Shown here: positions 20,168 through 52,958 of the stretch, one piece after another
Layout of the letters: each line of letters starts with the position of its first letter
How positions within the stretch are numbered: position 1 is the first letter of the stretch
DNA from: Corallochytrium limacisporum Hawaii
Lineage: Eukaryota; Protista; Pluriformea
NCBI GenBank assembly: GCA_002811645.1
Contig: PDIP01000151.1
Location: forward strand, 1 to 60,536
DNA: 60,536 nt
Direction of reading: 5' to 3'
Notes under the pieces: model-generated
Database searches by the model: none
Seen by the model: only the letters and a program-made list of their open reading frames with translations
Told to the model about the DNA's origin: nothing
Made by a program: the position numbers and the translations under genes

Positions 20168-20660
20168 CCCCCGCCGGGTAGGTTTGTTCTCGCTCCCTCA
20201 CACACCACTCTGCAAGTGTACATAGAACTGCAATGAATTGACTTAGGACGTTTTATGTCCCCAGCGCCTCCATAGGGGCACTAGGAACAGAACTCACTGA
20301 CACAAACATCCCTTAGGCACATTTCACATCCAATCTCTTGGGCGGAACAGAACGAGAGCACGATAGGTGTGTGTCTGTGTGGCGACCGATAGGAACCAGA
20401 GGCTCTCGAGGAGGAGTCACAAAGATAAGGGTGGGCCTGTGAGAGCACAGAAAGAGTCGAGGTATTTCGGGACATCAGTGTTCAACACTTTAGTATGATT
20501 GTGGGCATTTTGACAAGACTGGTTTGCGATATGAACAAAGCCTTTCGGGAACAGTCAAGCGTAAAGAAAATTAGATAAAAAGAAAACGACGACAACCAGA
20601 TCTTGTATTTGTGTCCAAGTGGTATAAGTAGACAGCGGACGTAGACAGTTGACTCACCTC

Positions 20661-21545
20661 ATGGAGAACCCTACGACTGACTTTACGGCTGCAATGCTCG
20701 AGACCGCAGTTAAGGGTGAAATTAGAATGGACGGGAACAGGCTAGAGACCGGCTCATGCACCTCCACCTCGGGGGCCAGTGCCATGACAGAAACCGTCCT
20801 GGACACTTTACAGAATGCATGTCACGACATTGACTACACCCTCTGGTCTGTGAAATCCAAGCACATTGGAGACCTGGAGGGCTTCAAGGCACTTCGGGAA
20901 CGGGCAAAGAATTTCTTAAGCATTGTAGAGGAAGAGATCAATACAATTGAACAAGACCAAGTAGTAGAAGACAAAGAACAGGAAGAAGAGATCGGTAATG
21001 TGACTGACGCTGATACGACCGGTTTCGAAGACCTATTGGACAAGACAGTCCTTATTGTCGATGACAGCCACATTGCGTGTAAGGTCATGAAGAAGCTCTT
21101 GTGCAACGTTGGCTTCAGTCGCGTTCGGGTAGCACACAACGGCGCGGAGGTCTATTTGGATAACTCCGCTGACATTATCATCAGTGACCTCTGCATGCCT
21201 CAGATGGATGGCTTCACATTGGGTCGGATGGTGCGTGCTCGTTGCAGCCGGTCCGGTTCACTTGCCAGCTCACAGCCGATGCTCCGCGAAGACTCGTGGA
21301 ACAAGAGCACCTCACTAGATCTCGTTAGTGGAGAAGGTCAGAATGGTCCAGGCGTGCGCCTGAATCCCTACGTCGCGGACGATGGTCCCTTGCTGGTTGT
21401 CTGCAGCACCAAGATTGACGAGTGTATGGATGAGCTGGTTGAGGCAGGCTTCAACGATTATCTCTGCAAACCGATGCGTCCCGGCAATCTCAAAGCCCTG
21501 CTACGTCGCATTTCATGGTCTCTCCGTAATGCTGAGAGGACGTGA
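20661..21545 (+). CDS. Two-component receiver (REC) domain protein with an N-terminal HisKA/DHp-like helical hairpin
   Basis: First ATG at 20661. VLIVDD, ISDLCMPQMDG (phospho-acceptor Asp at 21186-21188), VVCST and GFNDYLCKP are present, with a ~50-aa insertion inside REC. Confidence 0.88.
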   Translation: MENPTTDFTAAMLETAVKGEIRMDGNRLETGSCTSTSGASAMTETVLDTLQNACHDIDYTLWSVKSKHIGDLEGFKALRERAKNFLSIVEEEINTIEQDQVVEDKEQEEEIGNVTDADTTGFEDLLDKTVLIVDDSHIACKVMKKLLCNVGFSRVRVAHNGAEVYLDNSADIIISDLCMPQMDGFTLGRMVRARCSRSGSLASSQPMLREDSWNKSTSLDLVSGEGQNGPGVRLNPYVADDGPLLVVCSTKIDECMDELVEAGFNDYLCKPMRPGNLKALLRRISWSLRNAERT

Positions 21546-22219
21546 AGCAAGACAGTAGTGACCATTTCTGTATATCAAAAGAATAGCTCTCCTGAGGCAC
21601 CCAGATCCCTGGTGTGTCACACTCTTGTCACCTTCATTGACATACGAAACATAACATAACATAACATCTGCGTAACATGTAATGTATACATCCATAGACA
21701 CCATGCGTATAGCAAACAAAAACACGAAAGATTTTGATTCTGTGGCTTAAGCAACCGAGAGAGAGATATTAGTGCTTTAGTATTGTCTTGTTTACTTTGC
21801 CACGTAAAGATATAACGTGGACGGTTCTTCCAGTGATTCCGGGACGATTTGTTCGGCTCGCTACTCATCGCAATGTAGCAAGCGAGTCGGTGATCTTGGT
21901 GGCATGCAATCGCAAGTATCTGAATGGCTTCATTACAAATTCGCTTGTTCCACCTGATAAGTAACAAAGAAAAGGAAAGAGTGGAAGAGAATCCAAAATG
22001 ATGCGTCGGTTAGGAACTTCTGTCATTGGGGCTCAAAGAGGGATTGAGATCCGGGCGTGCAACAGTCATGCACCAGTGTTATTGAGAGAGTTGAGAGAGA
22101 GAGATGGTATGATACATATGGTGTAGTTCCTTATGATGACGACCCGGATCCTCTCCTCCTCTTCCTCCTCCAAAAACACAAAGTTCCTTTCGTTGACTGT
22201 TCGAATCATTCCAAATTGT

Positions 22220-22693
22220 CTACGCTACCTTATCAATACCAATAACGCCGCAAGCCTTGCGGCCCCCGGCGTGACCAGTGGTCTTGGAGTCATCATGTCC
22301 ACCCCTGCCCAGATCATCTGGGTCAGCGTGGACGACAACGGAGCGACCAAGGATGGTATGCTCTCCAAAGAGACTGATAACCTTGTCAACCTTGGTGAAC
22401 TCGGCGACGCCGCCGCTGGACTGGACATTGCCCATATCACCAATGTGGCGCTCATCATCATCGGGACCACCGTGGGTCCTGCCATGAGGGTTGAAGTGGC
22501 CACCAGCCGTCACACAGCCCTGGGTAACGTTACCGAACTCGTGGACGTGGAAACCATGATCACCGTCGCTCAATCCAGTGATTTTGCCACTGATCTGGCA
22601 GTGTTCGCCTTCCTTCTGCTGGAAGTAGACGATGCCCTCGACATTTTGGGCGTCGTTTGGGGACAGTTTGCAGATTGCTTTGCGCATAGACAT
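22220..22693 (-). CDS. SOD1: Cu/Zn superoxide dismutase
   Basis: HGFHVHEFG, GCVTAGGHFNP, THGGP, RHIGDMGNV, GRSVVVH and GGRKACGVIG, with all metal ligands present. An upstream in-frame ATG at 22744 is an alternative start. Confidence 0.97.
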   Translation of the reverse strand: MSMRKAICKLSPNDAQNVEGIVYFQQKEGEHCQISGKITGLSDGDHGFHVHEFGNVTQGCVTAGGHFNPHGRTHGGPDDDERHIGDMGNVQSSGGVAEFTKVDKVISLFGEHTILGRSVVVHADPDDLGRGGHDDSKTTGHAGGRKACGVIGIDKVA

Positions 22694-24332
22694 GATTCCA
22701 AGTGAGAATAAACGAAGATTGGAGGTCTCCACTCGACGAAGCATATTCTGTTCATCATCATTGTGCACTATGATCAGAAAAATACCTGATCTTTAAATCG
22801 GACAGGTGCGGACGGACCATGGTGGACCACCAACCACGAGAATCACGCACATCGCCCCAGAGAATGGTAGTATCGTGAGGCCAACTGAGTGCCCCAGGCC
22901 CGGCATTCCTGAAGAATCAACAAAGCCACTGTTTAGTGTTCCTGTCCAGTACTGCGTAGAATTGGTACTACACAATACTGAATATATATATATATATATC
23001 GCCATCAATGTGGTGCTAATACCATTCTGACAACACGGCTTCGCTGTGGCTGTATACACATATGCTGAGTATAGGTGGGTTCTCGGACGTGTGGTGAGGG
23101 CCAGTATGATTACCGGAAGGGGTGTGCATGCCATCCGGCTCCATTTCCTCTCTGGGGATGACAGTGTACTAAGTAAGGGGCCGGAGGCAAAACATATACC
23201 GGCAGGTACAGGCCCCGTCAATGACAAGTCCGAAGGCACCGGCTGGCAGGTACGTGTCAATTCTATCCTTCATTTGAAAGAAAAGTCAATTCGAAGCCGT
23301 CCGGTTATGCACCATGAGGGCGTACTGTGCGCGCACCAAAGCAGCTCTTCGTGAAACATTGGATTCAAGAATCTGATGGCATTGTACAGGAAGTCCCTGG
23401 TATGTATGGTACACAGTGGCAAGTCCAAAGTGCGCGCTGTGTTTCAGCCTTCTCTGGCCGGGGCGTGCAGCGAGCAGGTGCTTGTCGACCAAGACGCCCC
23501 ACAACGTGTTGATTACTATTGTGGGCAGCAGCACGTAAAGGAAAGGCAGAGGAGAACAACGTGAGGAAGTAAAGTTTTTTCAGCCCCGCAAGCACAGTTG
23601 GGGCTGGTACTTCGGAAACTGGAGGATAGGGGACGCGCGACCAGATGTGAGGAGAGTTGGTCTGCTATCTGTCTGCCCGGCTGCTGCCTATTGATCTCAG
23701 GCACGAACGGTCTACTGCATTGATTCGGCGAACGGCTTACTAGTTTGTTTTGGACCGGGGTACCATTGGACTCCTCCGCGGAGGCCAAACCTCCCAGGCC
23801 CAGGGGCCCGGAAAGGGCGCCTTCTACATTCACTGCCATGATTATAAATTATACGTAATATTGGAAAATATTTGCTGTCTACCAATTTGAGTTTTAAAAT
23901 TGATAATTAGATATACGTATCTTACGAATATTGCAGTAATCGTCTACAGTCAGGCGGGGACCCGCTTCTGTAGGTAGCTCGCGGTGGTCGTCCTGGGGTC
24001 AGCAGGCTCCATCATCTTTGTGATCAAAGTATGGACGTGTTGAAATTTGGGTGAAGCCATACGTCATATTTGGAAATGGAGATCATCTTTTTGTGAGTTG
24101 ACGGATTGATCCCTCACTGGTCTGGCCAACAAAATGTCTCACACAGAACTTTGCTCTTCTTCAACTGTTGATGGACTACTACGTGGGCAGTATGGAACTG
24201 TCTTGTTGTTCTCTCACTCTCTCTGCCCACGCGAGTTCTACCAGGACTGATCCCCCCCCCAACACACGAGCGACCCGAGACTGGCTCTGCGGCAGAGTGC
24301 TGGCCATTCTCCTACTTCGAAGATTCTGTAAA

Positions 24333-24387
24333 AGTATAATTATATATGCCAATTAGTTTAAATATGTCCGTATATATTTCATCCTCG
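24333..24387. promoter_or_regulatory. Second copy of the AT-rich island motif
   Basis: AGTATAAT...GTCCGTATATATTTCATCCTCG, in the divergent SOD1/rhodopsin-cyclase intergenic region. Confidence 0.4.
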
Positions 24388-25437
24388 GCAGCTTCCTCTA
24401 AAGTACCTTTGGTGCGTGTTGTGTTATATTGCGTTATCAAAATTCAACAAATGTTTCGTCTGCTCGCAAATGTTGCGACTCGGTTCCAGTGTTCGTGCTT
24501 AGTAGTAGTGTAAGCGCAGTGACATATAAACTAGACTCGCCAAGAAGGAAAACACTTTCCTGGTCCCGACGACTTCTGCGGTACACGGACTGGGTCAGAG
24601 AGTGCCCGGTCGAGTGGGTGCCGTGGAACCGAACCGTGTAACGCGGCTCTCTTTCCGGTCGCACAAAATTGTGCGAGGTAGGACGAAGGAAGCCCCAGGA
24701 CAACAGTGCAAGCCTAACTGTTGGGGTACACAGATCTCGACCCACAGGCCGGCGACTCTTCTCAGCGACCAACCCACCCCCCCCCCCTCCCCCTTTACCT
24801 CCCGCGCGGCTTGGAGCCCACCGAGAGAAAGTGTGAAAACGGCGGAGGAGGGAGTGGGGGGGACACGGCCGGGAGAGATCCGTGCGCTGACGGCAAGTGG
24901 GTTTGTGTTGAGATCAAAGAAAGGGGACGGGGTGTATACGAAAAAAGCACAAAGAAGAAAAGGGGAGAGAGAGAGAAAGCGGGTGGGACGGCAAGCGCGG
25001 ATCGCGTTGGTGACCGTTCTCGGAATCCTTGACAGGTGAAGAAACGTGGTATGAACAAGGGTCGTGTACTACTCAGCAGATGGGGAAAAGTTGACTTGAA
25101 ACAGACAACCGCGCAAACAGTGGTGCCCTGGAGCCAAAACTGGTCTCCGTGCTATTTAAAAAGAAGACCTGCACATGATGCGGAACGCAATCTAACCTTG
25201 AGCTACTAAGAGCTAGGTAGTACAGGTTGTGTGCTACATAACATTTGCTTCTCGTTTCTATCGAACTCAATGGACGTGTCACAGCCACATTGATCCTAGT
25301 CACCCTTCAAACCATACCGCTCTGAATAGGGGACATCCCGAGCTTGCATTGTCCACTAGGATGAAAGTTCACGGTTGGTGGTGACCAAAAGGGAGACAGC
25401 CGCATCGGACTGTAACTTTTCGTACCTCCTGTCCGTT

Positions 25438-26979
25438 ATGAGCGGTGACCCAAGGAAAGTTTCCGGCTCCATGAGCCAAGTGGGCTCCCAGCCCGACCTT
25501 GTTTTCAAGAACAATAGAAGATGGTTCGGGACTTTCATGGTTGTCAATATGGCCGTCTGGGCCCTTTGTGTTGCCGTGCTCTGCCCCATGGAGACTCAGG
25601 TCGTCCTTGAAGAGTTTCTGGACCGCAGCACCTACCGGCGCCTGTACACGGCCTATGGCTACTCCGTCACTGTCTTTGCTCTAGCTCTATGCTTTGATAT
25701 TGTTGGCTGGGTCACCGCGATGAATGAGGAGAAGCGTGCTTTCTCCCAGGTACTGATGGGTGTCTATGTGATTGCCCTGACCACATGCCTGCTGCACACG
25801 TTCAACACCGCTCCCGTCTTCATGAGCCCTTACGGTGTGCCCTTTCAGCCCAGCCGTATCCTGGAATGGATCTTTGCTTGCCCCGGCCTTATTGTTTTGA
25901 TGCATTGCCTCACAATGCCCCCCCAGGATGTCCGTTGGACCATTGCTGCTGACTACCTTGTCGGTATCCTAGGTTTTTTAGCCACCTGGCTGCCCAATCC
26001 ACACAACTACTACTTTCTTGTCCTTACCGTTATGGCCTTCTTCAAAGTCATCTTTGACATTTGGAACATGTTCAGCCAGGCCATTGAAGCCACCAGTGAC
26101 CGCCCCATCAACAAAAACGTCTTGAAGTTTCTGCGCATTCAGTGTGTCGTTACCTGGAGTGCCTTCCCCATCGGATGGTTCACGGCTGCCACTGGCAAGA
26201 CTGACCTGCTGGTCACGGAATCCCTGTATATCGTAGCTGACTTTGGGGCGAAAGTCCTACTTTCACTAGTGCTGGTGAACTGTAATGTTGATCAGATGCA
26301 TCAGTTCGAAACCAACAAACTGACCAAGATGTCCAAGGCCCTCAACGCCCAACTAGAAAAGAGCGAAAATTTGTTGAACTCGATGATGCCCGCTTCTGTT
26401 GTCAAACAGCTCACCTCTGGCGGGAATGTCGATTCCAAGGAATACGATGAAGTTACGGTCTTCTTCTCCGATATTGCAGGCTTTACTTCCCTATCCAGCC
26501 GCACTCCGCCTGCAAAGATGATCTCCATGCTGAACAGAATGTGGCAGGAGTACGACACCATAGCTAAGGGACACAACATGACCAAGATTGAGACCATCGG
26601 TGATGCCTTCCTTGGCGTGACCGGCTGTCCCGACCGTGACCACAAGCATGCCCAGAGCGCGGCAAACTTCTCCTTGGAGATCCTGGCCATGATTAGGGAG
26701 TTTCGCACTGAAGACGGTGAACCAATCCAGATACGTATTGGTCTGGCCACTGGATCGGTAACCGGTGGTCTGGTCGGAGATGTTTGCCCCCACTGGTCTA
26801 TCGTCGGTGACACGGTGACTCTGGCCTCTAAGATGGAGTCCACCTCTGAGCCCATGCGCATCCACGTCAGCGATTCTACAGCCAAATTCCTTCATGAGGA
26901 TTACAACATAGCTCCAGGGAATCCCTTCGAATTTAAAGATCGTGACATCAAGACATATTTCCTAGATGGTCGCAAATAA
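25438..26979 (+). CDS. Rhodopsin-guanylyl cyclase (CyclOp/RGC family; 8-TM type-1 rhodopsin + coiled coil + class III cyclase)
   Basis: First ATG at 25438 (513 aa). TM3 RILEWIFACP, TM6 TWSAFPIGW and TM7 ADFGAK (retinal Lys at 26251-26253); linker LLNSMMP; cyclase motifs VTVFFSDIAGFT, KIETIGDA, IRIGLATG, PHWSIVGDTVTLASKMES. Confidence 0.93.
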   Translation: MSGDPRKVSGSMSQVGSQPDLVFKNNRRWFGTFMVVNMAVWALCVAVLCPMETQVVLEEFLDRSTYRRLYTAYGYSVTVFALALCFDIVGWVTAMNEEKRAFSQVLMGVYVIALTTCLLHTFNTAPVFMSPYGVPFQPSRILEWIFACPGLIVLMHCLTMPPQDVRWTIAADYLVGILGFLATWLPNPHNYYFLVLTVMAFFKVIFDIWNMFSQAIEATSDRPINKNVLKFLRIQCVVTWSAFPIGWFTAATGKTDLLVTESLYIVADFGAKVLLSLVLVNCNVDQMHQFETNKLTKMSKALNAQLEKSENLLNSMMPASVVKQLTSGGNVDSKEYDEVTVFFSDIAGFTSLSSRTPPAKMISMLNRMWQEYDTIAKGHNMTKIETIGDAFLGVTGCPDRDHKHAQSAANFSLEILAMIREFRTEDGEPIQIRIGLATGSVTGGLVGDVCPHWSIVGDTVTLASKMESTSEPMRIHVSDSTAKFLHEDYNIAPGNPFEFKDRDIKTYFLDGRK

Positions 26980-27121
26980 GGCCAGGATGTAAACAGAAAA
27001 CCATGTTTTGTGATGCTGATTCGGCTTTAATACATAGTGACAAAAAAGGGTCTTTTTTTTGTAAGGGATATTCATGGCTAAACGGACGAAGAACAGTTTA
27101 GCGAATGGGACAATTTGCAGA

Positions 27122-28297
<1,176 letters not shown>

Positions 28298-43758: not shown

Positions 43759-46700
43759 ATGGTTCCTTCTCCCAAAGGGTCGACGATGCAGAACCTCAGC
43801 GTGGATACGCTGCTGGACTGCATGAGCCTCTTATACAGGGAATGTGAGCGGTCAGATTTGCGTAGGGACCGCTATGCTGCTCTCTTCCTGGAGCAATACA
43901 AGGACACGGTCGCGGCAATGGAATCAATGCGAGTGACAAAGGCTGACTTCCAGGTTCTACAAACAATAGGACGTGGTGCTTTTGGTGAGGTTTGCGTTGT
44001 GAAGCATAAGAAGAGTGGTCGGATATACGCGATGAAAAGTTTGAACAAGTGGGACATGTTGAAGCGCAACGAAACCGCACACTTCAGAGAAGAGCGTGAT
44101 CTGATGGCTATCGGCAACGTCCGTCACATTACTACCCTCTACTACGCCTTCCAGGACGAGAATACGCTATATCTGGTTATGGAATACTACAGTGGTGGTG
44201 ACCTGCTAACTGTGCTGGACGTGCATGACAATTGTTTCGATGAAGACATGGCTCGGTTCTATACGGCAGAAATCATTGCGGCCGTTGAGAGCATCCACAT
44301 GTTGGGATATATCCATCGAGATTTGAAGCCAGACAACATTCTGTTGGACAACGAGGGGCACATTCGTATTGCAGACTTTGGTTCCTGTACCCAGGTGGAC
44401 GAGAAGGATGGCAAGGTCACATCCAAAATGGCAGTGGGCACGCCAGATTATCTGAGTCCGGAGGTCCTGAAAAGCATGGACAGCAACACTCGATACGGCA
44501 CGGAATGTGACTACTGGAGCATTGGCGTAATTCTGTACGAAATGACCGTCGGTGACTTGCCATTTTCCAGTGATATCCTTACTGAGATGTACGGTAATAT
44601 CCTGAACCACAAGGAAGCACTGGAGTTTCCGGATGATGTCAACCTGAGCCCTGAGTTGGTTGATCTCATAAAACGGCTCTTGTGTGATGAGGAAGAGCGG
44701 CTGGGCCTGAAGACCATGGACGAGCTGAAGGACCATCCATGGTTTAAACAGGGCCAGCGTCCCATTAATTGGGACACACTACTGGAGACAGAACCTCCCT
44801 ATGTGCCAAAGGTTAGTTCTCCAGATGACACCTCCAACTTTGACATTGAACAGGTCATGTCCATGGCTCCGCCGCCCACAGAACGGGGACCTGCAAACAC
44901 TGGAGCGTTTAGTGGTGCAAACTTACCCTTTGTTGGCTACAGTTTTACCAGACAAGCACGCATTCGCCTTAGCCAGAGTGGTGTCGTGGAGAGGATGCGC
45001 AGTGTGTACGATCTTGCAGGCAAGTCCCTGGCATCTTTGCCTGATTTCAAAGGCAGCAACGAAGTGTCGGCATCGGCCTTGAACTTGAACTCGATACGTG
45101 AAGATGAAGTCAATGCCCAGACACAACAGAACATAAATCTGGAGATTCACCACGTCCGGGAATCTGAACTCACGGCACGAATTGAGGAACTTGAGACTGC
45201 CCAACAGCAAGCAGAAAAGGACTCTGAAGCACTGCTCAAGGAACTTACCAGCATGACTCTCAAGTTTGAGAATGCGACTGTGCAGTATGATGCCAAGGTA
45301 GAAGCCAATGAACAGCTTGAGAGTGAAAAAGGCGCTGTAGAGCGATCCCTGCGAGGTGCAATGAATGAAATCAACGACCTTAAGGGAGACTTGGACACTA
45401 TCAAGCAGCGTCTGGAGGCTACAGAGAAGTCCAAGAAATCTGCGGTCAAGATCCAGCAGGATCTCGAAGAGACCATTTCCCGGCTTGAGCAACAAATTGA
45501 AAACAAGACATCACAGCTTAAGGAAGCCCAGAGTTCTTCTAAATCCGATGCTAGCGCTCCTTTGGGAGCTGTTGCGAGCACAGAACTGATCACCTTGCAG
45601 GAGCAGGTCAAGACTCTGAGGCGGAAGGCGGCAGACAGCAACAGAGAAGCTGAGACCCTGGCGGAAGACGTCCGCAAGGCTCGCGACGAGGTACGAGCGG
45701 AGAAGAAGGCTGCAAGGAGTGCCAAGCTGGAGCTGGAGAGTGTGCAAGCTGAACTTGACGATGAGCGCAAGCGCGTCAAGAAGCTGAAGGATGAGATTGT
45801 TGCCTTAGAGGAAGATGCTGCCACCACTGACGCTGGTGAGGCCACAGAGGACTTAAAGGCTGAGATTGAGAAGCTGAAGTCCAGGGCTGAAGAGACCGAA
45901 GATGAGTTGCACGAGGCGAGCCGCGATCGTGCCACCTTCAAGGCCTGCATTCTTGGGCTTATGTCTGGCTTTTCTGGTTCCACTAACGCCCTGACGACCA
46001 TCCTTGGGTCCACTGTGGAGCATGTGCCGGAAGTCGAGGAGGCATTCAAGGGCTGGCGGCCCAAGGAAGCCCCCACGTTAGTGGCAGCCATTGCTGCTGC
46101 GGACGCAGTTGAGTCTAACAAATTGCGTCACGCCCTGGCCGAATTGGAGATCAAGAACAAGACCCTCCAACGGGAGCTGAACAAGGTGAATTCTGAATTG
46201 AAGGAATCGGTCGGACGTGTCAACACCTTGATGAGTACTCGGGTGGGAAGCGTTCGGGTCAAAAATCGCCTGCTGCGTGGCAACTCCGCCGTTTACCGGT
46301 CTCACAAGAAACCGATGTCCAAATACAAGGGCACCGGTTCTGTGGACAATATCATGGGTATTATGAAAAAGGACGAGGAAGAACACGAAGAGAACGAAGC
46401 GCGTCCCACCGACACCGAAACTGCCACTGTCAAACGCCGCGGTACGGACTTTAAGCGCCGTCGCGAAAAGGTGCACCAGCAAGAACTTATTGCCCTTAAG
46501 GCCGACCTAGAAAATCAGTTGAAGGCCAAGGCAGACCTGGAGGATCTGAACCGCGACATGCGGGAAGAGCTACAGGGTCTGAAGGACGAAGTCCACAACC
46601 TTGGTTTGCTTCTTGAAAAGGAACGTCTTGAGAACGAGCGTCTGAACAGTAGTATGGCCGTGCCCGTAGACACTGGTTCCGGTGAAGATATCATGGTAGT

Positions 46701-49059
46701 GGGCGGCCCCACTCTGCACAGCGTGGCCGATCTCGTCGACCGTGCATCTGTTGCTAACCTGCTGGACACTATCGAAGACGAAGAGGAGCCCGTTGCTGTC
46801 ATAGAAGCAGGTCAGAGCCAGCAAGAGATTCTCGTCCCGCAGTCCCAAGGAGTTTCACCTACCGGCTCCACTGACAATGTCCATTTGAGCCCCGCTGATG
46901 CCAGTTCTATCCTTGTCAACGGTGGGTCGTGCAGCGAGAGTTGGAACGTATTGTCAAATGGCACTACTTCCTCTGGGGATTTCCAGAACCAGAACACGCG
47001 CCGTAGCAAGAGTGCCGTTGCCGCCACCCCTCCCTCTGGAAGTAGCGTCAATGCTACTACTGAGGTCCGGATCAGCCTTGTGGAGGCTTCCGAAGTGGAA
47101 TCTTTCCAGCGCGCTATGGCTGGAGGTTTCCCGGTGGTAGATTTCGAGGAAGTACCCGCTGTTGAGGGTCATAAGTTCCGCCATGTTGCGTTGTCCATGC
47201 CTAAGGCCTGCCTGGTGTGCAATCAAATCATCCTCGGTGCTGTTCGACAGAGTGTGCGGTGCATAGACTGTGGCTTCCGTGCCCACCCAGAGTGTCTTTC
47301 GCATGCCACCAACACGGAGCCTTTCGTCTGCGATCCGGAGGCTGTCAAGGCCCGTAAGGGCCAAGGATTGGTTGTACTGGAGCGCACAATGAGTGCTTTG
47401 GTGAAGGAACGCGGCATGTCCCCTCTATTGCACTGCACGCTAACCTATGTGATCAGCGAGAAAGATGCAGGCGACAGTTTGCTGGCAGACTGTAACGTCA
47501 TTCTAACAGACCGTTACCTTTTGGTGCTCTCTCCGAGCCACAGTGGTAACTTCCTGCGCGTTTTGCGCTGCATTGACCTGGCGATGCCCAATGTCCGCCT
47601 CCGCTCGGCCGTTGAGGGAGAGGTTCCTTCAATTGACAAATGGTTCGTCATTGAAACCGGTGGTGGCGACTTAACGCAGGCCGTCGTGATGATGGCACCC
47701 ACCGCAGACGTTCGTAGTACCTTTACGAGTACCCTTCAGTCACTCATCCAACGCGTGACCGCCTTTGAGCTTGTGAGCAAAGAGTCTGCCAGTGCTCTAG
47801 ATGAGATGCGTGCGACCCCGAGCACACTGACAATGGCGCCGCAGATCCGACGTCTGAAACTTTCGTGGTTCGGTCTACCATTCCAACACAAGGGACTGCC
47901 TCGCTTCGTTGTCGGTGGAACTGCTGTGGCGACATCTCCGGTCTCCTCAACCGAAGAGGCTGCCCCTGTGGTGTACGGCGTGCACATGCACAAACAAACG
48001 GCAATTCTGGTCGCTAGCAACGGTATGTTTGCTGTGTCCACCACAGAACGACGCAGCCGCATGCGCAAGATTGTGGACAAGCACATGAGCTACTTTGCCG
48101 TCTGTACCAATGCAGTGACTGACAAGGAAGGCCAGTTCCAAAAACCGACACATCTGATGGCCACACGCACGGAGAAGACAGGTCACGTCCGTATCTTCAA
48201 TCTTGACGCTACTCTCCAGGCTACCGCCCTGGATAAGGCCTTAAAGACCGGCGTCAGTGTCAACGCCCTTTCGGGCACTTCCAAACCTCTGAACTGTGCT
48301 TTCTTCGGACTCATGTCCGCCGCTGTGGCGGTGGAGAAACCCAAGATTGGTGGCCTGCTGCGGAAGTCCACCATCAGGTACACGCGTTCAAGTCCCACTC
48401 GTCCTGCTGCCACTCCCAACAGTACCAGTCCACAGGACGAGTGGGTTTTGTATGCTGTGCAAGGCGACAAGCTATCCGTGATCCACTCAGGAACTGGAAA
48501 ACTGATCCGTCAACACACCATCCCGCCGTCCCAGCTTCCGGAGTCCGCAATTGCCGGTCGGGCCATTGACAAGCGTACAATCGTCCTGCGGGACGCCACC
48601 CGCGGTGTAGTATTCCACCTTGCGGATAATGGGCGTACCAATGCGCTCGTGGCAGCCGACCAGGATCCTTCGCTGAGCATGTTCGCCAACAACGTGAGCA
48701 TGCCCATCGTTGACGTTGTAGGATTAGACCACGGGGAGATTCTTGTTGCCTACACAGGTCTCGGTGTGGTAGTCAATGCACGCAATGGTCGCCGCGCCTC
48801 TGCAACGGAATTCCACTGGACCGCTCGCCCACTGGCTGTTACGATCGAGAGCTTCACGGGTGACGACACTCGTTTGGAACCGGACCGTGTTGTGATTTGC
48901 TACACTCAATCTCACATTGCTGTTCACGACCTGCAGACAGGCGCACTGCGTCAAATCTTGGACTTGGGCAACCCGGCGGCTGCCATGGCCGCTTCGCTTT
49001 CCTTCACAACCACCATGCGCGGCAGCAAGGCCTACGCCAGTTTGCTCTCTCTTGCATGA
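43759..49059 (+). CDS. MRCK/DMPK-family AGC kinase (kinase, coiled coil, DMPK coil, C1, PH, CNH)
   Basis: LSVDTLLD cap, IGRGAFGEV, YAMKSLNKWDMLKR..AHFREERD, HRDLKPDN, AVGTPDYLSPE and LPFVGYSFT hydrophobic motif; long coiled coil; C1 HKF..C..C...C..C...H..C; PH-like and CNH-like regions. Confidence 0.92.
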   Translation: MVPSPKGSTMQNLSVDTLLDCMSLLYRECERSDLRRDRYAALFLEQYKDTVAAMESMRVTKADFQVLQTIGRGAFGEVCVVKHKKSGRIYAMKSLNKWDMLKRNETAHFREERDLMAIGNVRHITTLYYAFQDENTLYLVMEYYSGGDLLTVLDVHDNCFDEDMARFYTAEIIAAVESIHMLGYIHRDLKPDNILLDNEGHIRIADFGSCTQVDEKDGKVTSKMAVGTPDYLSPEVLKSMDSNTRYGTECDYWSIGVILYEMTVGDLPFSSDILTEMYGNILNHKEALEFPDDVNLSPELVDLIKRLLCDEEERLGLKTMDELKDHPWFKQGQRPINWDTLLETEPPYVPKVSSPDDTSNFDIEQVMSMAPPPTERGPANTGAFSGANLPFVGYSFTRQARIRLSQSGVVERMRSVYDLAGKSLASLPDFKGSNEVSASALNLNSIREDEVNAQTQQNINLEIHHVRESELTARIEELETAQQQAEKDSEALLKELTSMTLKFENATVQYDAKVEANEQLESEKGAVERSLRGAMNEINDLKGDLDTIKQRLEATEKSKKSAVKIQQDLEETISRLEQQIENKTSQLKEAQSSSKSDASAPLGAVASTELITLQEQVKTLRRKAADSNREAETLAEDVRKARDEVRAEKKAARSAKLELESVQAELDDERKRVKKLKDEIVALEEDAATTDAGEATEDLKAEIEKLKSRAEETEDELHEASRDRATFKACILGLMSGFSGSTNALTTILGSTVEHVPEVEEAFKGWRPKEAPTLVAAIAAADAVESNKLRHALAELEIKNKTLQRELNKVNSELKESVGRVNTLMSTRVGSVRVKNRLLRGNSAVYRSHKKPMSKYKGTGSVDNIMGIMKKDEEEHEENEARPTDTETATVKRRGTDFKRRREKVHQQELIALKADLENQLKAKADLEDLNRDMREELQGLKDEVHNLGLLLEKERLENERLNSSMAVPVDTGSGEDIMVVGGPTLHSVADLVDRASVANLLDTIEDEEEPVAVIEAGQSQQEILVPQSQGVSPTGSTDNVHLSPADASSILVNGGSCSESWNVLSNGTTSSGDFQNQNTRRSKSAVAATPPSGSSVNATTEVRISLVEASEVESFQRAMAGGFPVVDFEEVPAVEGHKFRHVALSMPKACLVCNQIILGAVRQSVRCIDCGFRAHPECLSHATNTEPFVCDPEAVKARKGQGLVVLERTMSALVKERGMSPLLHCTLTYVISEKDAGDSLLADCNVILTDRYLLVLSPSHSGNFLRVLRCIDLAMPNVRLRSAVEGEVPSIDKWFVIETGGGDLTQAVVMMAPTADVRSTFTSTLQSLIQRVTAFELVSKESASALDEMRATPSTLTMAPQIRRLKLSWFGLPFQHKGLPRFVVGGTAVATSPVSSTEEAAPVVYGVHMHKQTAILVASNGMFAVSTTERRSRMRKIVDKHMSYFAVCTNAVTDKEGQFQKPTHLMATRTEKTGHVRIFNLDATLQATALDKALKTGVSVNALSGTSKPLNCAFFGLMSAAVAVEKPKIGGLLRKSTIRYTRSSPTRPAATPNSTSPQDEWVLYAVQGDKLSVIHSGTGKLIRQHTIPPSQLPESAIAGRAIDKRTIVLRDATRGVVFHLADNGRTNALVAADQDPSLSMFANNVSMPIVDVVGLDHGEILVAYTGLGVVVNARNGRRASATEFHWTARPLAVTIESFTGDDTRLEPDRVVICYTQSHIAVHDLQTGALRQILDLGNPAAAMAASLSFTTTMRGSKAYASLLSLA

Positions 49060-49157: not shown

Positions 49158-52100
49158 CTATCCTGTACCTCTCAGTCGATCCGGTTCCCTGTCCCGCTCC
49201 TTGTGGCTGCCGGAATGTCGCCGCCTGGCCCTTTCTTCTGAGCTGACAATAATGTCCGTCCTCCCTGTACCGCCCAACACATCTGGACCGCCCGCCTGCC
49301 ACGAATTCCGGCCCGAGGGCCTGACCGGAATCTGACCGAGGACAACGCGATTATAAATAGCCTTCGTGTTGTGATTGTGCCGCTGAGCATCCAGTAGCTG
49401 ATAGGTGGCGTAAACGTGATTAAAGGTCCGTTGCCGGATGCTACGGATAGCCAACTTGCGGGGAATGCCAAGGCGAGCCATGTCGAAGAGTATGTCGTCA
49501 TCAATTAGATCGGCGTTGGCTGTGTCCGGAGTAAGGGCTTCGGACACCCACGGTTGCTGTACCAAGTCCGCGATCGTAAGCCTCGCACTGCGTTCGTTTG
49601 CGAGCAGGCCATTCAACAACATCACGACCGGAAGCGGCCACGAGAAGTTGTCGCCGTCCTGCAGGTAGACGGGCAAAGCAGGGTCCGACACGCTGCCGCC
49701 ATTGCTTGCGGGGGTGCCACGACCGCTACTGGTGGGCGTGACGGTGTTGGGCGTGCCCGACTTGCTGCCACCAGTCGGTGTACCTGGGATGGGACGTAGC
49801 CCAGGGATGGCCTCAGTGCTCCGCGACTGCGGACTGTGGATGTTGATTGAGCCCATGAGCTTGCCTTTGTGTTGCAAGATGTCCTGTACGCTGCCAAACG
49901 GAAACTTACCGCGCAATAACAGATACAGCATGACTCCGAGTGCCCACATGTCCACCTCTGGTCCAACATTTGTGTTCCCCTTGATGATTTCGGGAGCCAT
50001 ATACGGCACAGATCCACAGGGACCCACATCGTAACCGTCTTCATGTCTAGCTTGCATTGTGGAAAATCCGAAATCAAACACCTTTATCGTGTTGGTACCT
50101 CGCTCCACCAGGCAATTGTCAAGCTTGAGATCGCGATGGACAATGCCACGATTGTGCATGTACCGCACGGCGCTCACAATGCCTCCGAAATAGTACTGCG
50201 CTTGCTCCTCCGAAAGGCCTCCAATGGGTCCACCTTCATTTCCCTCCGCTGCCGCAAGCATCTTATTATGATGCACCTGCTCACTCACGAATTCCAAGAG
50301 TGTCTTGCCCGGGATATATTCACAGACCAGGAACAGTCTTTCTGGTCGGCTGATAATCTCACAGAGCTGTACAATGTTGACATGCTTCAATACTTTCCAG
50401 ATCCGCAGCTCGTCGTGAATGTGGGCCGCATTGCGCACATTGGTATCGATTATCTTGATGGCCACATTGCGTCGCGTTGATCGATGTTTTGCCTTAAGGA
50501 CTGCACCATAGGTCCCGGCCCCGATAATGGACATAACCTGATAATTGCCAATGTAATCCCCGACTCCACTCAGGTTCCGAAGCAGGGTCTCGGAACTGTG
50601 GTGGTCGGGTCCTGTCGATTGCGAGCTATACGAGCCGCCTGAGTCCTCCATGTACCGATCGTGCATACGATCGCGGTGGTGGTGGCTGCCAAGGTGGTGA
50701 TGCCGAGTATGCCCACTATGATGGTGATGGTGATGATGACGCAGGTGGTGATTGTGACCGGGCTGGGTGAGGTGGCTGTGACTGTGGGAACGACCAGTCC
50801 GACTTGGAGATCTGTTGCTCCGATCAATGAGACGAAAGTGGCCTTGAAAGTGTTGCTTCAGGCTGCGCTGCAGCCGCATAATATACAGTTTGGAATCATC
50901 ATGCTTCACCTGATCTATATTGCACTTGAAGCGGATCGAGGTGCCATCTGAGTGGAGCGTATCCAAATCCACAGATCCGTGTTCAGGCAGATAGTTGAGG
51001 TGCTTAACCTGGGGGAACACATCACTAATGTTTCTGCCAAGGTACTCCGTTGACTTTTGTTCCAGACCCAGTAAGAAGCTTGTGAGATGATTGTAGGAGC
51101 GGATAATTCCTTTCTCATCAAAGCTAATCACGCCCTGAATCTCATTCCTGCCCACGTCCCGAATCTCGGCCATAAAAACTCTTTCCTTATTGCTAAGTGT
51201 CTTCTCCACTACCAGTAGGGATATGGGAATGATGTGTCCCGTCCGTGTCTTTGCCTCCATAGCGCGAGGCTTACCGATGACCTTACTCTCGCCGGTTTCC
51301 AGGTACTTTTCAATGTACTTTTGGTGCTGAAATTTGTGCTGGATTGGCATGATGATACTCAGAGGTTGTCCGATCATTTCCTCACTTGTGTAGCAGAAGA
51401 TCTCACAGGTGACTTCATTGACACCGAGGATCTTTCCGTCCGTGCCTGCAACGATCTTGCCGAAGTCCTCTACGATTGGTTCCACTGTCGCATAAAAGTT
51501 AACATCACCATCCGTTCGGACGTCGCTCACAGTGAGACGCACTGTGATCAATGTGCCTGAACTATGTACGGCCTCTACTTGACGACTTTGTCCAATAATG
51601 TGGGTTTTGCCCGTCTCCATATACTGATCGATAAAGTGCTGATGTACCGCACGGTACGGTTCCGGCATTAGCATTTCCACATTCTTGCCAATCATTTCTT
51701 GGGGTGTGTACCCAAATATTTCAGCGCAAACCTCATCAACCATATGGATCTGCGAGTCCGGGCCCATGGTCAGGAACCCAGTCTTACAATCGAAGGCGTT
51801 TACCCGTTTGTTCGCTGCGCGATGCTTCCTCATATTTCGCAATGACTTCTGGTTATCAGCCCGTTTGGTACTCGCAACCGAGTGTTGCCGCATAGATTTG
51901 TCCAGATATGGTAGTCCATTCCTCACAGGTGAGTGCATTCCGGCCGGAGCCTTCCAACCTGTCCGCTTACGCTCCAATTCGGGGGTGAGGGTGAGTTTCA
52001 TATTTGCCATTTCCGCAGTCATCTCCAGCGCCGGATCAGCGCTGTGGGGTGAAGTCAGGGGCTTTCGCGCTGGCATCTGTTTATTGGGTCGCTTTTCTGT

Positions 52101-52274
52101 ATCACTATCATACGATTTCTCCCTAATAACTGTACGCAGTCCATCATAGCCATCAACTGAATGCGAGTCGAGATCAATGGGTGCTTCAATGTGCTGTACC
52201 GATCCCAGCTGCTGGGCCATCGCTTTGGCCTCTTTCTCCGCCCGCGTACTCTGCGGGTGGTTTTCTTCAGTCAT
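49158..52274 (-). CDS. PAS-PAS-PAS / His-rich / AMPK-MARK-family Ser/Thr kinase / UBA protein
   Basis: First ATG at 52274 (acaccATG). Two FixL-like PAS domains and a third degenerate one; kinase motifs IGAGTYG, VAIK, HRDLKLDN, DFG, CGSVPYMAPE, GPEVDMWALGV; UBA-like DDDILFDMARLG...HVYATYQLL. Confidence 0.9.
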   Translation of the reverse strand: MTEENHPQSTRAEKEAKAMAQQLGSVQHIEAPIDLDSHSVDGYDGLRTVIREKSYDSDTEKRPNKQMPARKPLTSPHSADPALEMTAEMANMKLTLTPELERKRTGWKAPAGMHSPVRNGLPYLDKSMRQHSVASTKRADNQKSLRNMRKHRAANKRVNAFDCKTGFLTMGPDSQIHMVDEVCAEIFGYTPQEMIGKNVEMLMPEPYRAVHQHFIDQYMETGKTHIIGQSRQVEAVHSSGTLITVRLTVSDVRTDGDVNFYATVEPIVEDFGKIVAGTDGKILGVNEVTCEIFCYTSEEMIGQPLSIIMPIQHKFQHQKYIEKYLETGESKVIGKPRAMEAKTRTGHIIPISLLVVEKTLSNKERVFMAEIRDVGRNEIQGVISFDEKGIIRSYNHLTSFLLGLEQKSTEYLGRNISDVFPQVKHLNYLPEHGSVDLDTLHSDGTSIRFKCNIDQVKHDDSKLYIMRLQRSLKQHFQGHFRLIDRSNRSPSRTGRSHSHSHLTQPGHNHHLRHHHHHHHSGHTRHHHLGSHHHRDRMHDRYMEDSGGSYSSQSTGPDHHSSETLLRNLSGVGDYIGNYQVMSIIGAGTYGAVLKAKHRSTRRNVAIKIIDTNVRNAAHIHDELRIWKVLKHVNIVQLCEIISRPERLFLVCEYIPGKTLLEFVSEQVHHNKMLAAAEGNEGGPIGGLSEEQAQYYFGGIVSAVRYMHNRGIVHRDLKLDNCLVERGTNTIKVFDFGFSTMQARHEDGYDVGPCGSVPYMAPEIIKGNTNVGPEVDMWALGVMLYLLLRGKFPFGSVQDILQHKGKLMGSINIHSPQSRSTEAIPGLRPIPGTPTGGSKSGTPNTVTPTSSGRGTPASNGGSVSDPALPVYLQDGDNFSWPLPVVMLLNGLLANERSARLTIADLVQQPWVSEALTPDTANADLIDDDILFDMARLGIPRKLAIRSIRQRTFNHVYATYQLLDAQRHNHNTKAIYNRVVLGQIPVRPSGRNSWQAGGPDVLGGTGRTDIIVSSEERARRRHSGSHKERDREPDRLRGTG

Positions 52275-52958
52275 GGTGTTCGAATCAACAGACCCGCAGC
52301 ATGTGTGGTCCACGACCAATTCCGCCGCTTGTGTACACGGCAATATACAGAGTCCCTATTCGAATCTCATCGTCCTCTATTTATGTCACCTCCTACGGAG
52401 CGCTATATTCTTACGATTCCACCGTCTTCTGGGATCTCAGAGATTCATCTCCAAGCTGATCACGTCACACGCTTTGCGGCTATTAGGACACGTTGTGTAC
52501 CTTCATCTGATCTACACGATGCATAACGGCATGAGTCCAATTCTTTACTTGGATTTGCATGGCCGCATTTGCCGTTCTGCGGCCGTAGCAAACCCCCATC
52601 CCCGCCCTTCACTGGCTCTCTCCCCTTTGCCTCTCGCTCTCCCTCTCTCTCTCTCTCTGTCTATGCCAGCCACTCCCTCACGCCGTGAATTTCCTTTGGG
52701 TTTGCTGCCAGTGTGTGCGGTCAGGGGACCTCCTCAGTTCCGCGGGGCTGGACAGTGTAAATGGCCCCGTGAGACCCGCAAGACCAACGAAGGAAAAAAA
52801 CCCAAAGGGAGCGAGAGCAAGAAGAAGAAGAAATAAGGAAAAAGGGAGTGACGCAGGAGAAAAAAGGCACCCCACTGCCGCCGCCCCCTCCACTTTTCTC
52901 TCTTTTGGTCCTCGGGAGAAAAACTATGAAAGCCGGGGGTTGGGGGGGGGGGCGAAAG

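What the first reader, a model, noticed from the sequence alone, without database searches (positions are those of the whole stretch)
25438..26979. Rhodopsin-guanylyl cyclase with a half catalytic site: predicted obligate heterodimeric light sensor in an apparently non-fungal host
Seen: an 8-helix microbial rhodopsin with retinal Lys (DFGAK), counterion Glu (TM3) and Asp (TM7), fused to a class III cyclase. Both metal-binding Asp residues (FSDI, IGDA) and the GC-specific Glu (KIE) are kept. The segment at 26788-26838 reads PHWSIVGDTVTLASKMES, whereas homodimeric fungal CyclOps have PHWCLVGDTVNTASRMES, so the base-binding Cys and the transition-state Asn and Arg are replaced by Ser, Thr and Lys. 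Established: this split matches the sGC alpha/beta and AC C1/C2 division of labour, and heterodimeric rhodopsin cyclases with a neorhodopsin partner are known from chytrid fungi. Inference: this is the metal-donating subunit, and a complementary (possibly NeoR-like) subunit is encoded elsewhere. The neighbouring genes suggest a unicellular holozoan, which would extend this light-to-cGMP system outside its best-known fungal range. It is also an optogenetic candidate.
Basis: partly seen in the sequence, partly recalled or inferred. Interest (0 to 1): 0.88.

Follow-up and report, generated by a model that had tools for sequence, protein, structure and literature searches.

The report
Split light-activated cyclase in animal relative
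A single-celled marine relative of animals carries two copies of a light-sensing enzyme so far described only in fungi; each copy has lost a different half of the catalytic site, so they probably work only as a pair, an arrangement that some fungi reached separately.

Summary
Window 25438-26979 is a single-exon, 513-aa rhodopsin-guanylyl cyclase (RGC) with eight membrane helices. It keeps the metal/phosphate residues (D345, D389, R433) but has T461/K465 for the catalytic N...R. The host is Corallochytrium limacisporum (Holozoa). The predicted partner exists: the genome's only other RGC (Clim_evm44s144, contig C173) keeps N570, R574 and K616 and has lost the first metal Asp and the phosphate Arg. 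The half-sites are reciprocal. Two corrections: Cys to Ser is not a loss, and the partner is not neorhodopsin-like. It is the window protein whose cyclase matches chytrid NeoR (T455/K459), the experimentally shown metal donor. Trees reject kinship with NeoR and group the gene with a Syssomonas RGC and with its partner, so the split is convergent. The partner naturally lacks the Asp whose removal raised chytrid activity ninefold. Retinal synthesis genes and cGMP effectors are present. I found no paper on holozoan RGCs. Other first-stage notes flagged the partner. Pairing, activity and substrate are inferred, not shown, and the partner's base residues (Asp/Val) are non-canonical.

The parts
25438..26979 (+). 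Single-exon gene for the 513-aa rhodopsin-guanylyl cyclase (metal-donating subunit, here 'subunit A')
   Evidence: unspliced contig
25033..27050 (+). Extent of one contig from a probable RNA run: about 400 nt of leader, the whole CDS and about 70 nt of trailer. Strand and ends cannot be read from contigs.
   Evidence: run X1, record 1; no differences, no joints
25489..25590 (+). Extra N-terminal membrane helix (TM0, residues 18-51) typical of enzyme rhodopsins; the public gene model (476 aa) starts at Met38 inside it
25624..26292 (+). Seven-helix microbial rhodopsin core (residues 63-285)
25864..25878 (+). TM3 counterion E143 and A147 (position of NeoR D140; Thr in most RGCs)
26239..26253 (+). 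TM7 counterion D268 and retinal-binding K272
26293..26427 (+). Helical linker; the spacing from retinal Lys to first metal Asp is 73 residues, as in fungal RGCs (74 in the partner)
26428..26967 (+). Class III cyclase domain (residues 331-510)
26470..26472 (+). D345, first metal-binding Asp (kept)
26590..26604 (+). E385 (guanine-selecting Glu, kept) and D389 (second metal Asp, kept)
26734..26736 (+). R433, gamma-phosphate Arg (kept)
26788..26841 (+). Degenerate base/transition-state segment: S454 (for Cys), T461 (for Asn), K465 (for Arg); T461/K465 align with RgNeoR T455/K459
26926..26946 (+). Beta7-beta8 loop: K500 kept, but the Gly-rich KGKG motif reads KDRD; the partner keeps KGLG

Best explanation
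The window gene encodes one subunit of a heterodimeric, light-switched cyclase of Corallochytrium limacisporum. Its partner is the 631-aa paralogue Clim_evm44s144 at G000:C173:125052-126947 (minus). The two arose by duplication of one pluriformean RGC and lost opposite halves of the active site. In the head-to-tail cyclase dimer one working site forms: the window protein gives the metal aspartates and phosphate Arg (D345, D389, R433), and the partner gives the base pocket and transition-state residues (D492, R561, V563, N570, R574, K616). The second site (partner Q455/D496/T542 facing window T461/K465) is dead from both sides. Visible light on one or both conventional retinal chromophores moves TM7 and the linker and releases the site, most likely making cGMP for a PKG-like kinase or a cyclic-nucleotide-gated-type channel. 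Shown here: sequences, host, reciprocal residue loss, paralogy, independence from NeoR. Inferred: pairing, activity, GTP specificity, which chromophore triggers, and the physiological output.
For: Only two RGCs are in the genome. The residue loss is reciprocal. On residue sets taken from the CaAC structure paper (PMC5967339), the partner keeps 9/14 base-face but 1/8 metal/phosphate-face residues (Fisher p 0.03), and the window protein keeps 7/8 of the metal face. Window T461/K465 equal RgNeoR T455/K459. PMC12264004 shows that the NeoR cyclase alone is inactive, that NeoR gives the metals and RGC1 the base residues, and that only one site works. Partner Q455 aligns with RGC1 D379, whose D379A mutation raised light-triggered activity ninefold. 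The partner's best hit among 1.84 billion representatives is the window protein (166 against 146 bits). The two group at 96/93 in the rhodopsin+linker tree. Both keep the retinal Lys, counterions, linker length and intact folds. A retinal synthesis route and cGMP effectors are encoded.
Against: There is no direct evidence of pairing or co-expression; only the window gene was laid on reads. The genes are on different contigs, unlike the linked chytrid NeoR/RGC(a) pairs (PMC10622942). The partner is very diverged (26% identity; 37 of 76 near-invariant cyclase columns kept), and its Asp/Val base pair is unlike any other RGC here, so GTP selection is uncertain. Arg to Lys is conservative, so a weak homodimer is not excluded. 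In NeoR, restoring N and R did not restore activity (PMC12264004), so T...K marks but does not fully explain inactivity. The window protein's own face test is not significant (11/14 against 7/8). The cyclase-only tree does not place the partner.
Confidence: 0.7

Rival explanations
1. The window protein is a low-output homodimeric light-activated guanylyl cyclase. Lys substitutes for Arg well enough, and the partner acts separately or only as a modulator.
For: All other catalytic residues are kept, including E385 and K500; Ser is allowed at the Cys position (PMC7384201). N...K variants occur outside the NeoR clade (P0011, P0053). Its Syssomonas relative has a complete site.
Against: The same T...K pair in RgNeoR goes with an inactive isolated cyclase (PMC12264004, PMC10622942). 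The partner would then have no reason to keep N, R, K and the base pocket while losing 7 of 8 metal-face residues.
Confidence: 0.12
2. The two pair, but the complex makes little or no cGMP. It is either a pseudo-enzyme scaffold or has changed or relaxed nucleotide specificity, because the partner's base pocket reads Asp/Val.
For: E497 is the main guanine contact in CaGC (PMC7384201) and is 100% conserved in the other rows; the partner has the shorter Asp, plus Val for Cys and Ser for the Gly before the second metal Asp. The partner is on a very long branch.
Against: The partner keeps an acidic residue at that position, gains the Arg found in animal-type guanylyl cyclases two residues before the Cys position (role of that Arg from my own knowledge), and keeps N, S, R and K, which have no use without catalysis. 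It has no Lys/Asp adenine signature.
Confidence: 0.13
3. The window protein is completed by one of the genome's non-rhodopsin cyclases rather than by the second RGC.
For: The genome has about ten other class III cyclase domains, several with N...R.
Against: Those domains are complete on their own or sit in large two-domain proteins. Only the second RGC shares the membrane domain and linker register. The one orphan fragment with C/N/R (C195, 84 aa) lacks the first half of the domain.
Confidence: 0.05

Closest known systems
Chytrid heterodimeric RGC: NeoR + RGC1/2 of Rhizoclosmatium globosum (PMC7655827, PMC10622942, PMC12264004)
   Same: Two RGC paralogues, one active site. The T...K subunit donates the metal aspartates. 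Short N-termini.
   Different: Separate origin (window+NeoR clade rejected, p-AU 1e-6 to 1e-9 on full length). No near-infrared counterion triad in either subunit. In chytrids the base-donating subunit keeps a complete residue set and its isolated domain can be active; here that subunit has lost D457- and R545-equivalents, so the split is fully reciprocal. The genes are unlinked. The host is a holozoan.
Homodimeric RGC / CyclOp of Blastocladiella emersonii and Catenaria anguillulae (PMC5967339, PMC7384201)
   Same: Same architecture (TM0 + 7 helices + linker + class III cyclase), 38-40% identity, same linker length, cyclase fold rmsd about 1.2-1.5 A, same E/D counterions.
   Different: Those have two complete symmetric sites and a long N-terminus needed for activation (PMC8575461). 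The window protein lacks N573/R577 equivalents and has under 30 residues before TM0.
Syssomonas multiformis RGC (EukProt EP00128 P000236) and an unnamed environmental clade (P0002, P0004, P0005, L081)
   Same: Nearest relatives (42-45% identity). Window + Syssomonas 100/99; these plus the environmental clade are separated from all named fungal RGCs by a 100/99 branch.
   Different: All have a complete catalytic set (Syssomonas Ala for Cys), so they are predicted homodimers. None is characterised. The Syssomonas data set is known to be contaminated (PMC13345962), though its grouping with Corallochytrium argues that this sequence is genuine.
Animal soluble guanylyl cyclase alpha/beta and membrane adenylyl cyclase C1/C2
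   Same: Same division of labour: one chain gives two Asp and an Arg, the other gives base residues, Asn and Arg (as summarised in PMC6592433).
   Different: No rhodopsin and different regulators; related only through the class III cyclase domain (32-35% identity). A working analogy, not membership.
Choanoflagellate rhodopsin-phosphodiesterase (SrRhPDE, 7D7Q/7CJ3)
   Same: Closest solved membrane domain: E 8e-29 by sequence; Z 26.6 over 270 residues for the partner model. Also a holozoan light-to-cGMP device.
   Different: It degrades rather than makes cyclic nucleotides.

Membership tests
Rhodopsin-guanylyl cyclase (RGC/CyclOp) | Type I rhodopsin fused N-terminally to a class III cyclase in one chain | tested here: met
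   single exon
Rhodopsin-guanylyl cyclase (RGC/CyclOp) | Eight membrane helices (extra TM0) | tested here: met
   Predicted model; hydropathy; match to SrRhPDE
Rhodopsin-guanylyl cyclase (RGC/CyclOp) | Retinal-binding Lys with TM3 Glu and TM7 Asp counterions | tested here: met
   K272, E143, D268
Rhodopsin-guanylyl cyclase (RGC/CyclOp) | Descent from the same gene fusion as fungal RGCs | tested here: met
   38-45% identity over 86-94% of length to RGCs; linker register conserved. Trees are unrooted, so direction of descent is not shown.
Rhodopsin-guanylyl cyclase (RGC/CyclOp) | Light-dependent GTP to cGMP conversion | not testable with these tools
   Needs expression and assay
Homodimeric RGC(b) | Complete catalytic set in one chain (D, E, D, R, C, N, R, K) | tested here: not met
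   T461 and K465 replace N and R
Neorhodopsin (NeoR) | Counterion triad E136/D140/E262, in particular Glu at the TM7 position | tested here: not met
   Window E143/A147/D268; partner E212/T216/D377
Neorhodopsin (NeoR) | Member of the chytrid NeoR clade | tested here: not met
   Window+NeoR rejected, p-AU 1.2e-9 and 1.3e-6; partner+NeoR rejected on rhodopsin+linker, p 0.0004. Cyclase domain alone does not reject (p 0.12), but its best tree puts the window protein with Syssomonas at 99/97.
Neorhodopsin (NeoR) | Cyclase lacking the NxxxR motif (T455/K459) with metal aspartates kept | tested here: met
   T461/K465, D345/D389; it works like NeoR's cyclase without being NeoR
Neorhodopsin (NeoR) | Far-red absorption, bistability, fluorescence | not testable with these tools
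   Not expected from the pocket residues
Heterodimeric RGC (NeoR/RGC(a) type) | A second RGC gene supplying NxxxR in the same genome | tested here: met
   G000:C173
Heterodimeric RGC (NeoR/RGC(a) type) | The two genes clustered on opposite strands | tested here: not met
   C57 and C173; neighbours are SOD1/HPPD and a Rab-GAP gene
Heterodimeric RGC (NeoR/RGC(a) type) | Activity only on co-expression | not testable with these tools
   Needs assay

The most novel reading that the evidence does not exclude
[quoted passage not shown] In Corallochytrium it independently became an obligate heterodimer with fully reciprocal half-sites and two visible-light chromophores. This pair reached the same T...K change as chytrid NeoR and carries as its natural state the loss of the inhibitory second site, giving a two-pigment, single-site light-to-cGMP switch in a transfectable animal relative with no described flagellated stage or light behaviour.
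Probability: 0.4. Interest if true: 0.85.

Novelty: new variant of a known kind. Interest (0 to 1): 0.72.

Why it matters
Published surveys place the origin of this photoreceptor in the ancestor of fungi and tie it to zoospore phototaxis (PMC9616733, PMC10622942). Finding it in two pluriformeans, on their own branch, reopens that dating, by older ancestry or by an early transfer. Heterodimeric RGCs were thought to stem from one duplication in Chytridiales. This looks like a second origin with the same two substitutions, which separates heterodimer formation from near-infrared sensing. It gives a natural test of the proposal that the second site is an inhibitory allosteric site, because the partner lacks the very Asp whose removal raised chytrid activity ninefold. 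C. limacisporum grows axenically and can be stably transfected (10.1101/2020.11.12.379420), so the question of what an animal relative does with light-made cGMP is directly testable. A two-part cyclase could also serve as an intersectional optogenetic tool.

Tried and rejected
Fungal contamination of the contig: rejected. The gene is in two samples from separate studies with about 0.6% divergence, on one contig with the neighbouring HPPD gene, and branches outside named fungal RGCs. Sequencing error at the catalytic codons: rejected. A third RGC in the genome: none found with the rhodopsin domain alone or with Pfam PF01036; the C195 hit is an 84-aa cyclase fragment with no rhodopsin. An orthologue of the partner elsewhere: none in the word-indexed search, the 1.84-billion representative search or JGI metagenomes; this is absence in those collections only. 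An outgroup for rooting: the rhodopsin-only search returned only the query, so vertical descent and transfer could not be told apart. Metagenome runs held only identical fragments or unrelated matches, not a new relative. The host of the environmental sister clade could not be identified. RPE65-type carotenoid oxygenase: not found; a Blh-type enzyme is present instead. Ten literature searches found no paper naming an RGC in Corallochytrium or Syssomonas; subscription-only papers were not searched. The heterodimer could not be modelled, as the folding tool takes one chain.

Full report
Observation. The open frame at 25438-26979 (+) encodes 513 residues without introns. Pfam finds a microbial rhodopsin (76-285) followed by a class III cyclase (331-510). 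The best solved matches are the cyclase domains of the Blastocladiella and Catenaria RGCs (about 50% identity) and, for the membrane part, the Salpingoeca rhodopsin-phosphodiesterase. An AlphaFold model (mean pLDDT 89) has eight membrane helices, the last continuing into the linker, and its cyclase overlays CaGC at about 1.3 A. With BeRGC numbering verified in the alignment, the protein keeps the retinal Lys (K272), both counterions (E143, D268), both metal aspartates (D345, D389), the phosphate Arg (R433), the guanine Glu (E385) and the late Lys (K500). It has S454, T461 and K465 in place of C566, N573 and R577. A probable-RNA contig covers 25033-27050 with no difference and no joint. A second sample differs at 20 places over 3.5 kb, four of them in the CDS (S9F, Y110N, a synonymous change at S464, N490H), and keeps the three odd residues. 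The tool only guesses that these runs are RNA; the lack of coverage upstream of 24897 fits that guess. The public model of this gene is 476 aa and begins at Met38, inside TM0, so it is probably truncated.

Host. The assembly is 24.11 Mb. Its second RGC is identical to EukProt Clim_evm44s144. Corallochytrium limacisporum has a 24.1 Mb genome (PMC5560861). The nearest named homologue of the window protein is from Syssomonas multiformis, its sister lineage in Pluriformea (PMC8061703). All other named homologues with both domains are fungal (one is a synthetic construct of a fungal RGC).

The partner. Searches of the genome with the whole protein, the rhodopsin part alone and both Pfam models find exactly two RGCs. 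The second lies at C173:125052-126947 (minus), 631 aa in one frame. It keeps the retinal Lys (K381), the counterions (E212, D377) and the linker register (74 against 73 residues), and folds as an enzyme rhodopsin plus cyclase with a long helical TM5-TM6 insertion. Its catalytic residues mirror those of the window protein: Q455 for the first metal Asp, T542 for the phosphate Arg, D496 kept, and N570, S573, R574 and K616 kept. On residue sets taken from the CaAC-ATP analogue structure (PMC5967339), it keeps 9 of 14 base-face and 1 of 8 metal/phosphate-face residues (Fisher p 0.03), against a background of 37 of 76 near-invariant cyclase columns. The window protein keeps 7 of 8 on the metal face. 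Its own loss is narrow (T461, K465 and an altered beta7-beta8 loop) and is not significant by that count. The partner's base-selecting pair is D492/V563 instead of Glu/Cys, which no other RGC here shows.

Relation to neorhodopsin. Window T461/K465 align with RgNeoR T455/K459. Work on the R. globosum pair (PMC12264004) showed that the isolated NeoR cyclase is inactive, that NeoR supplies the metal aspartates while RGC1 supplies the base residues, that only one site is active, and that RGC1-D379A raises light-triggered activity ninefold. Partner Q455 aligns with RGC1 D379. So the window protein has NeoR's cyclase role, and the partner resembles the disinhibited RGC1 mutant. Neither has NeoR's chromophore pocket (E/A/D and E/T/D against E/D/E). 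In chytrids RGC1/2 keep all catalytic residues (PMC8815786); here the split is complete on both sides. One caution from the same paper: putting N and R back into NeoR did not restore activity, so T...K is a marker of the role, not its whole cause. The Cys to Ser change is not a loss: CaGC's Cys faces away from the base and Ser is a known variant (PMC7384201), Glu/Ala is accepted as GTP-specific (PMC6592433), and two complete cyclases of this genome have Thr.

Phylogeny. In a 42-row mixture-model tree the window protein, the partner, Syssomonas and an environmental clade lie outside the chytrid RGCs, and NeoR is nested within chytrids. Without the long partner branch, window + Syssomonas is 100/99, and these plus the environmental clade are split from all named fungal RGCs at 100/99. 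Forcing the window protein with NeoR is rejected on full length (p-AU 1e-9; 1e-6). On the cyclase alone it is not rejected (p 0.12), although the best tree still groups it with Syssomonas at 99/97. On rhodopsin+linker, window + partner is 96/93, the three pluriformean sequences 99/98, and partner + NeoR is rejected (p 0.0004); the alternative of window + Syssomonas excluding the partner is not rejected (p 0.07). The partner's best hit among 1.84 billion representatives is the window protein. The simplest reading is a duplication within Pluriformea, probably on the Corallochytrium line, and convergent gain of T...K. Rows left out: fragments, and near-copies above 68% identity. The trees are unrooted and an outgroup search failed, so ancestry from the opisthokont ancestor and an early transfer cannot be told apart. 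The Syssomonas data are known to be contaminated (PMC13345962).

Supporting pathway. The genome encodes a phytoene-synthase-like gene beside two CrtI genes (C230), a two-domain lycopene cyclase (C175) and a Blh-type beta-carotene dioxygenase (C64), so it can probably make retinal. It also encodes a PKG-like kinase (C19), one channel with a cyclic-nucleotide-binding domain (C7) and six class I phosphodiesterases. These show that the route is possible, not that it is wired to this receptor.

Mechanism. Most likely (0.70) the two RGCs form a heterodimer with one active site, metals from the window protein and base and transition-state residues from the partner, switched by visible light and making cGMP. 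Rivals are a weak homodimer (0.12), a pair with little or altered catalysis owing to the Asp/Val pocket (0.13), and completion by another cyclase (0.05). Which chromophore triggers is unknown. In chytrids it is the base-donating subunit, but here the metal donor has the better conserved rhodopsin (27 against 15 of 37 conserved columns). The life cycle described for C. limacisporum has spherical cells, coenocytes and dispersive amoebae (PMC8061703), so the output may not be flagellar steering; this is inference.

Novelty. RGCs and heterodimeric RGCs are known. Surveys describe them as fungal and the heterodimer as one chytrid duplication (PMC9616733, PMC10622942). Ten searches of the open literature found no report of an RGC in Corallochytrium or Syssomonas; closed-access papers were not covered. 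Other first-stage notes of this scan flagged a rhodopsin-cyclase on another piece of this genome, whose length (1896 letters) equals the partner's; I had found it before looking. Verdict: a new variant of a known kind, real and well supported at sequence level, with pairing and activity awaiting one simple co-expression assay. Interest 0.72.

Noticed in passing
L068:3782-4669 (-) and L068:5341-6543 (+) (G000:C64): A heliorhodopsin gene lies about 0.7 kb from the Blh-type beta-carotene 15,15'-dioxygenase gene, on the opposite strand, with a short 156-aa ORF between them: a small retinal-supply and rhodopsin cluster in a holozoan.
   Followed up: partly
G000:C230:21695-29319: A phytoene-synthase-like gene and two CrtI phytoene desaturase genes within 8 kb; the lycopene cyclase is a separate two-domain gene on C175. 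Origin (possible bacterial transfer) not examined.
   Followed up: partly
G000:C171:163140-163760; C77:156050-156679 and 161532-162161: Three stand-alone microbial rhodopsins; the two I read have a pump-like D-T motif in TM3 and the retinal Lys. With the heliorhodopsin and two RGCs this osmotroph has at least six rhodopsin genes.
   Followed up: partly
G000:C230:3761-8788: A 2088-aa frame with a cyclic-nucleotide-binding domain and a C1/C2 adenylyl cyclase pair, suggesting a cyclase regulated by cyclic nucleotide; it lies about 13 kb from the carotenoid genes.
   Followed up: no
G000:C33:159907-160398 and C235:90053-90619: Two further cyclase domains with opposite half-sites (C33 keeps the metal Asp pair and lacks N...R; C235 lacks the Asp pair and keeps N...R); possibly another split cyclase pair.
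   Followed up: no
L077:4521-4775 (-) (G000:C195): An orphan 84-aa C-terminal guanylyl cyclase fragment with Cys, Asn and Arg kept, squeezed between a UBA2-like and a metacaspase-like gene; looks like a relic.
   Followed up: partly
P0121 residues about 290-335 (partner): The partner has a roughly 38-residue helical insertion in the cytoplasmic TM5-TM6 loop with RRSS and RRMS kinase-like sites, and an acidic stretch after TM0; candidate feedback-regulation element.
   Followed up: partly
window 25876-25878: Ala at the BR T89 position, shared with the environmental clade (P0002, P0004, P0005). A T137A change red-shifted GhRGC2 by 24 nm (PMC10622942); I did not check that T137 is the same position.
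   Followed up: no
window 20649-28270: Neighbours are a receiver-domain protein (20649-21545 +), a Cu/Zn superoxide dismutase (22220-22768 -) and HPPD (27122-28270 -, convergent, 142 nt gap). No evidence of a functional link was found.
   Followed up: partly
P0032, P0102, P0011, P0053: Other RGCs outside the NeoR clade also alter the NxxxR motif (G...K in P0032, T...R in a Gonapodya protein, N...K in P0011 and a Synchytrium protein), hinting that half-site decay recurs in this family.
   Followed up: no
P0002, P0004, P0005, L081: An unnamed environmental RGC clade with complete catalytic sites sits between the pluriformean and fungal sequences; host unknown.
   Followed up: partly
window 43759-49059 (+) and 49158-52343 (-): An MRCK/ROCK-like kinase (kinase, C1, CNH) and a PAS-domain kinase lie tail to tail.
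   Followed up: no
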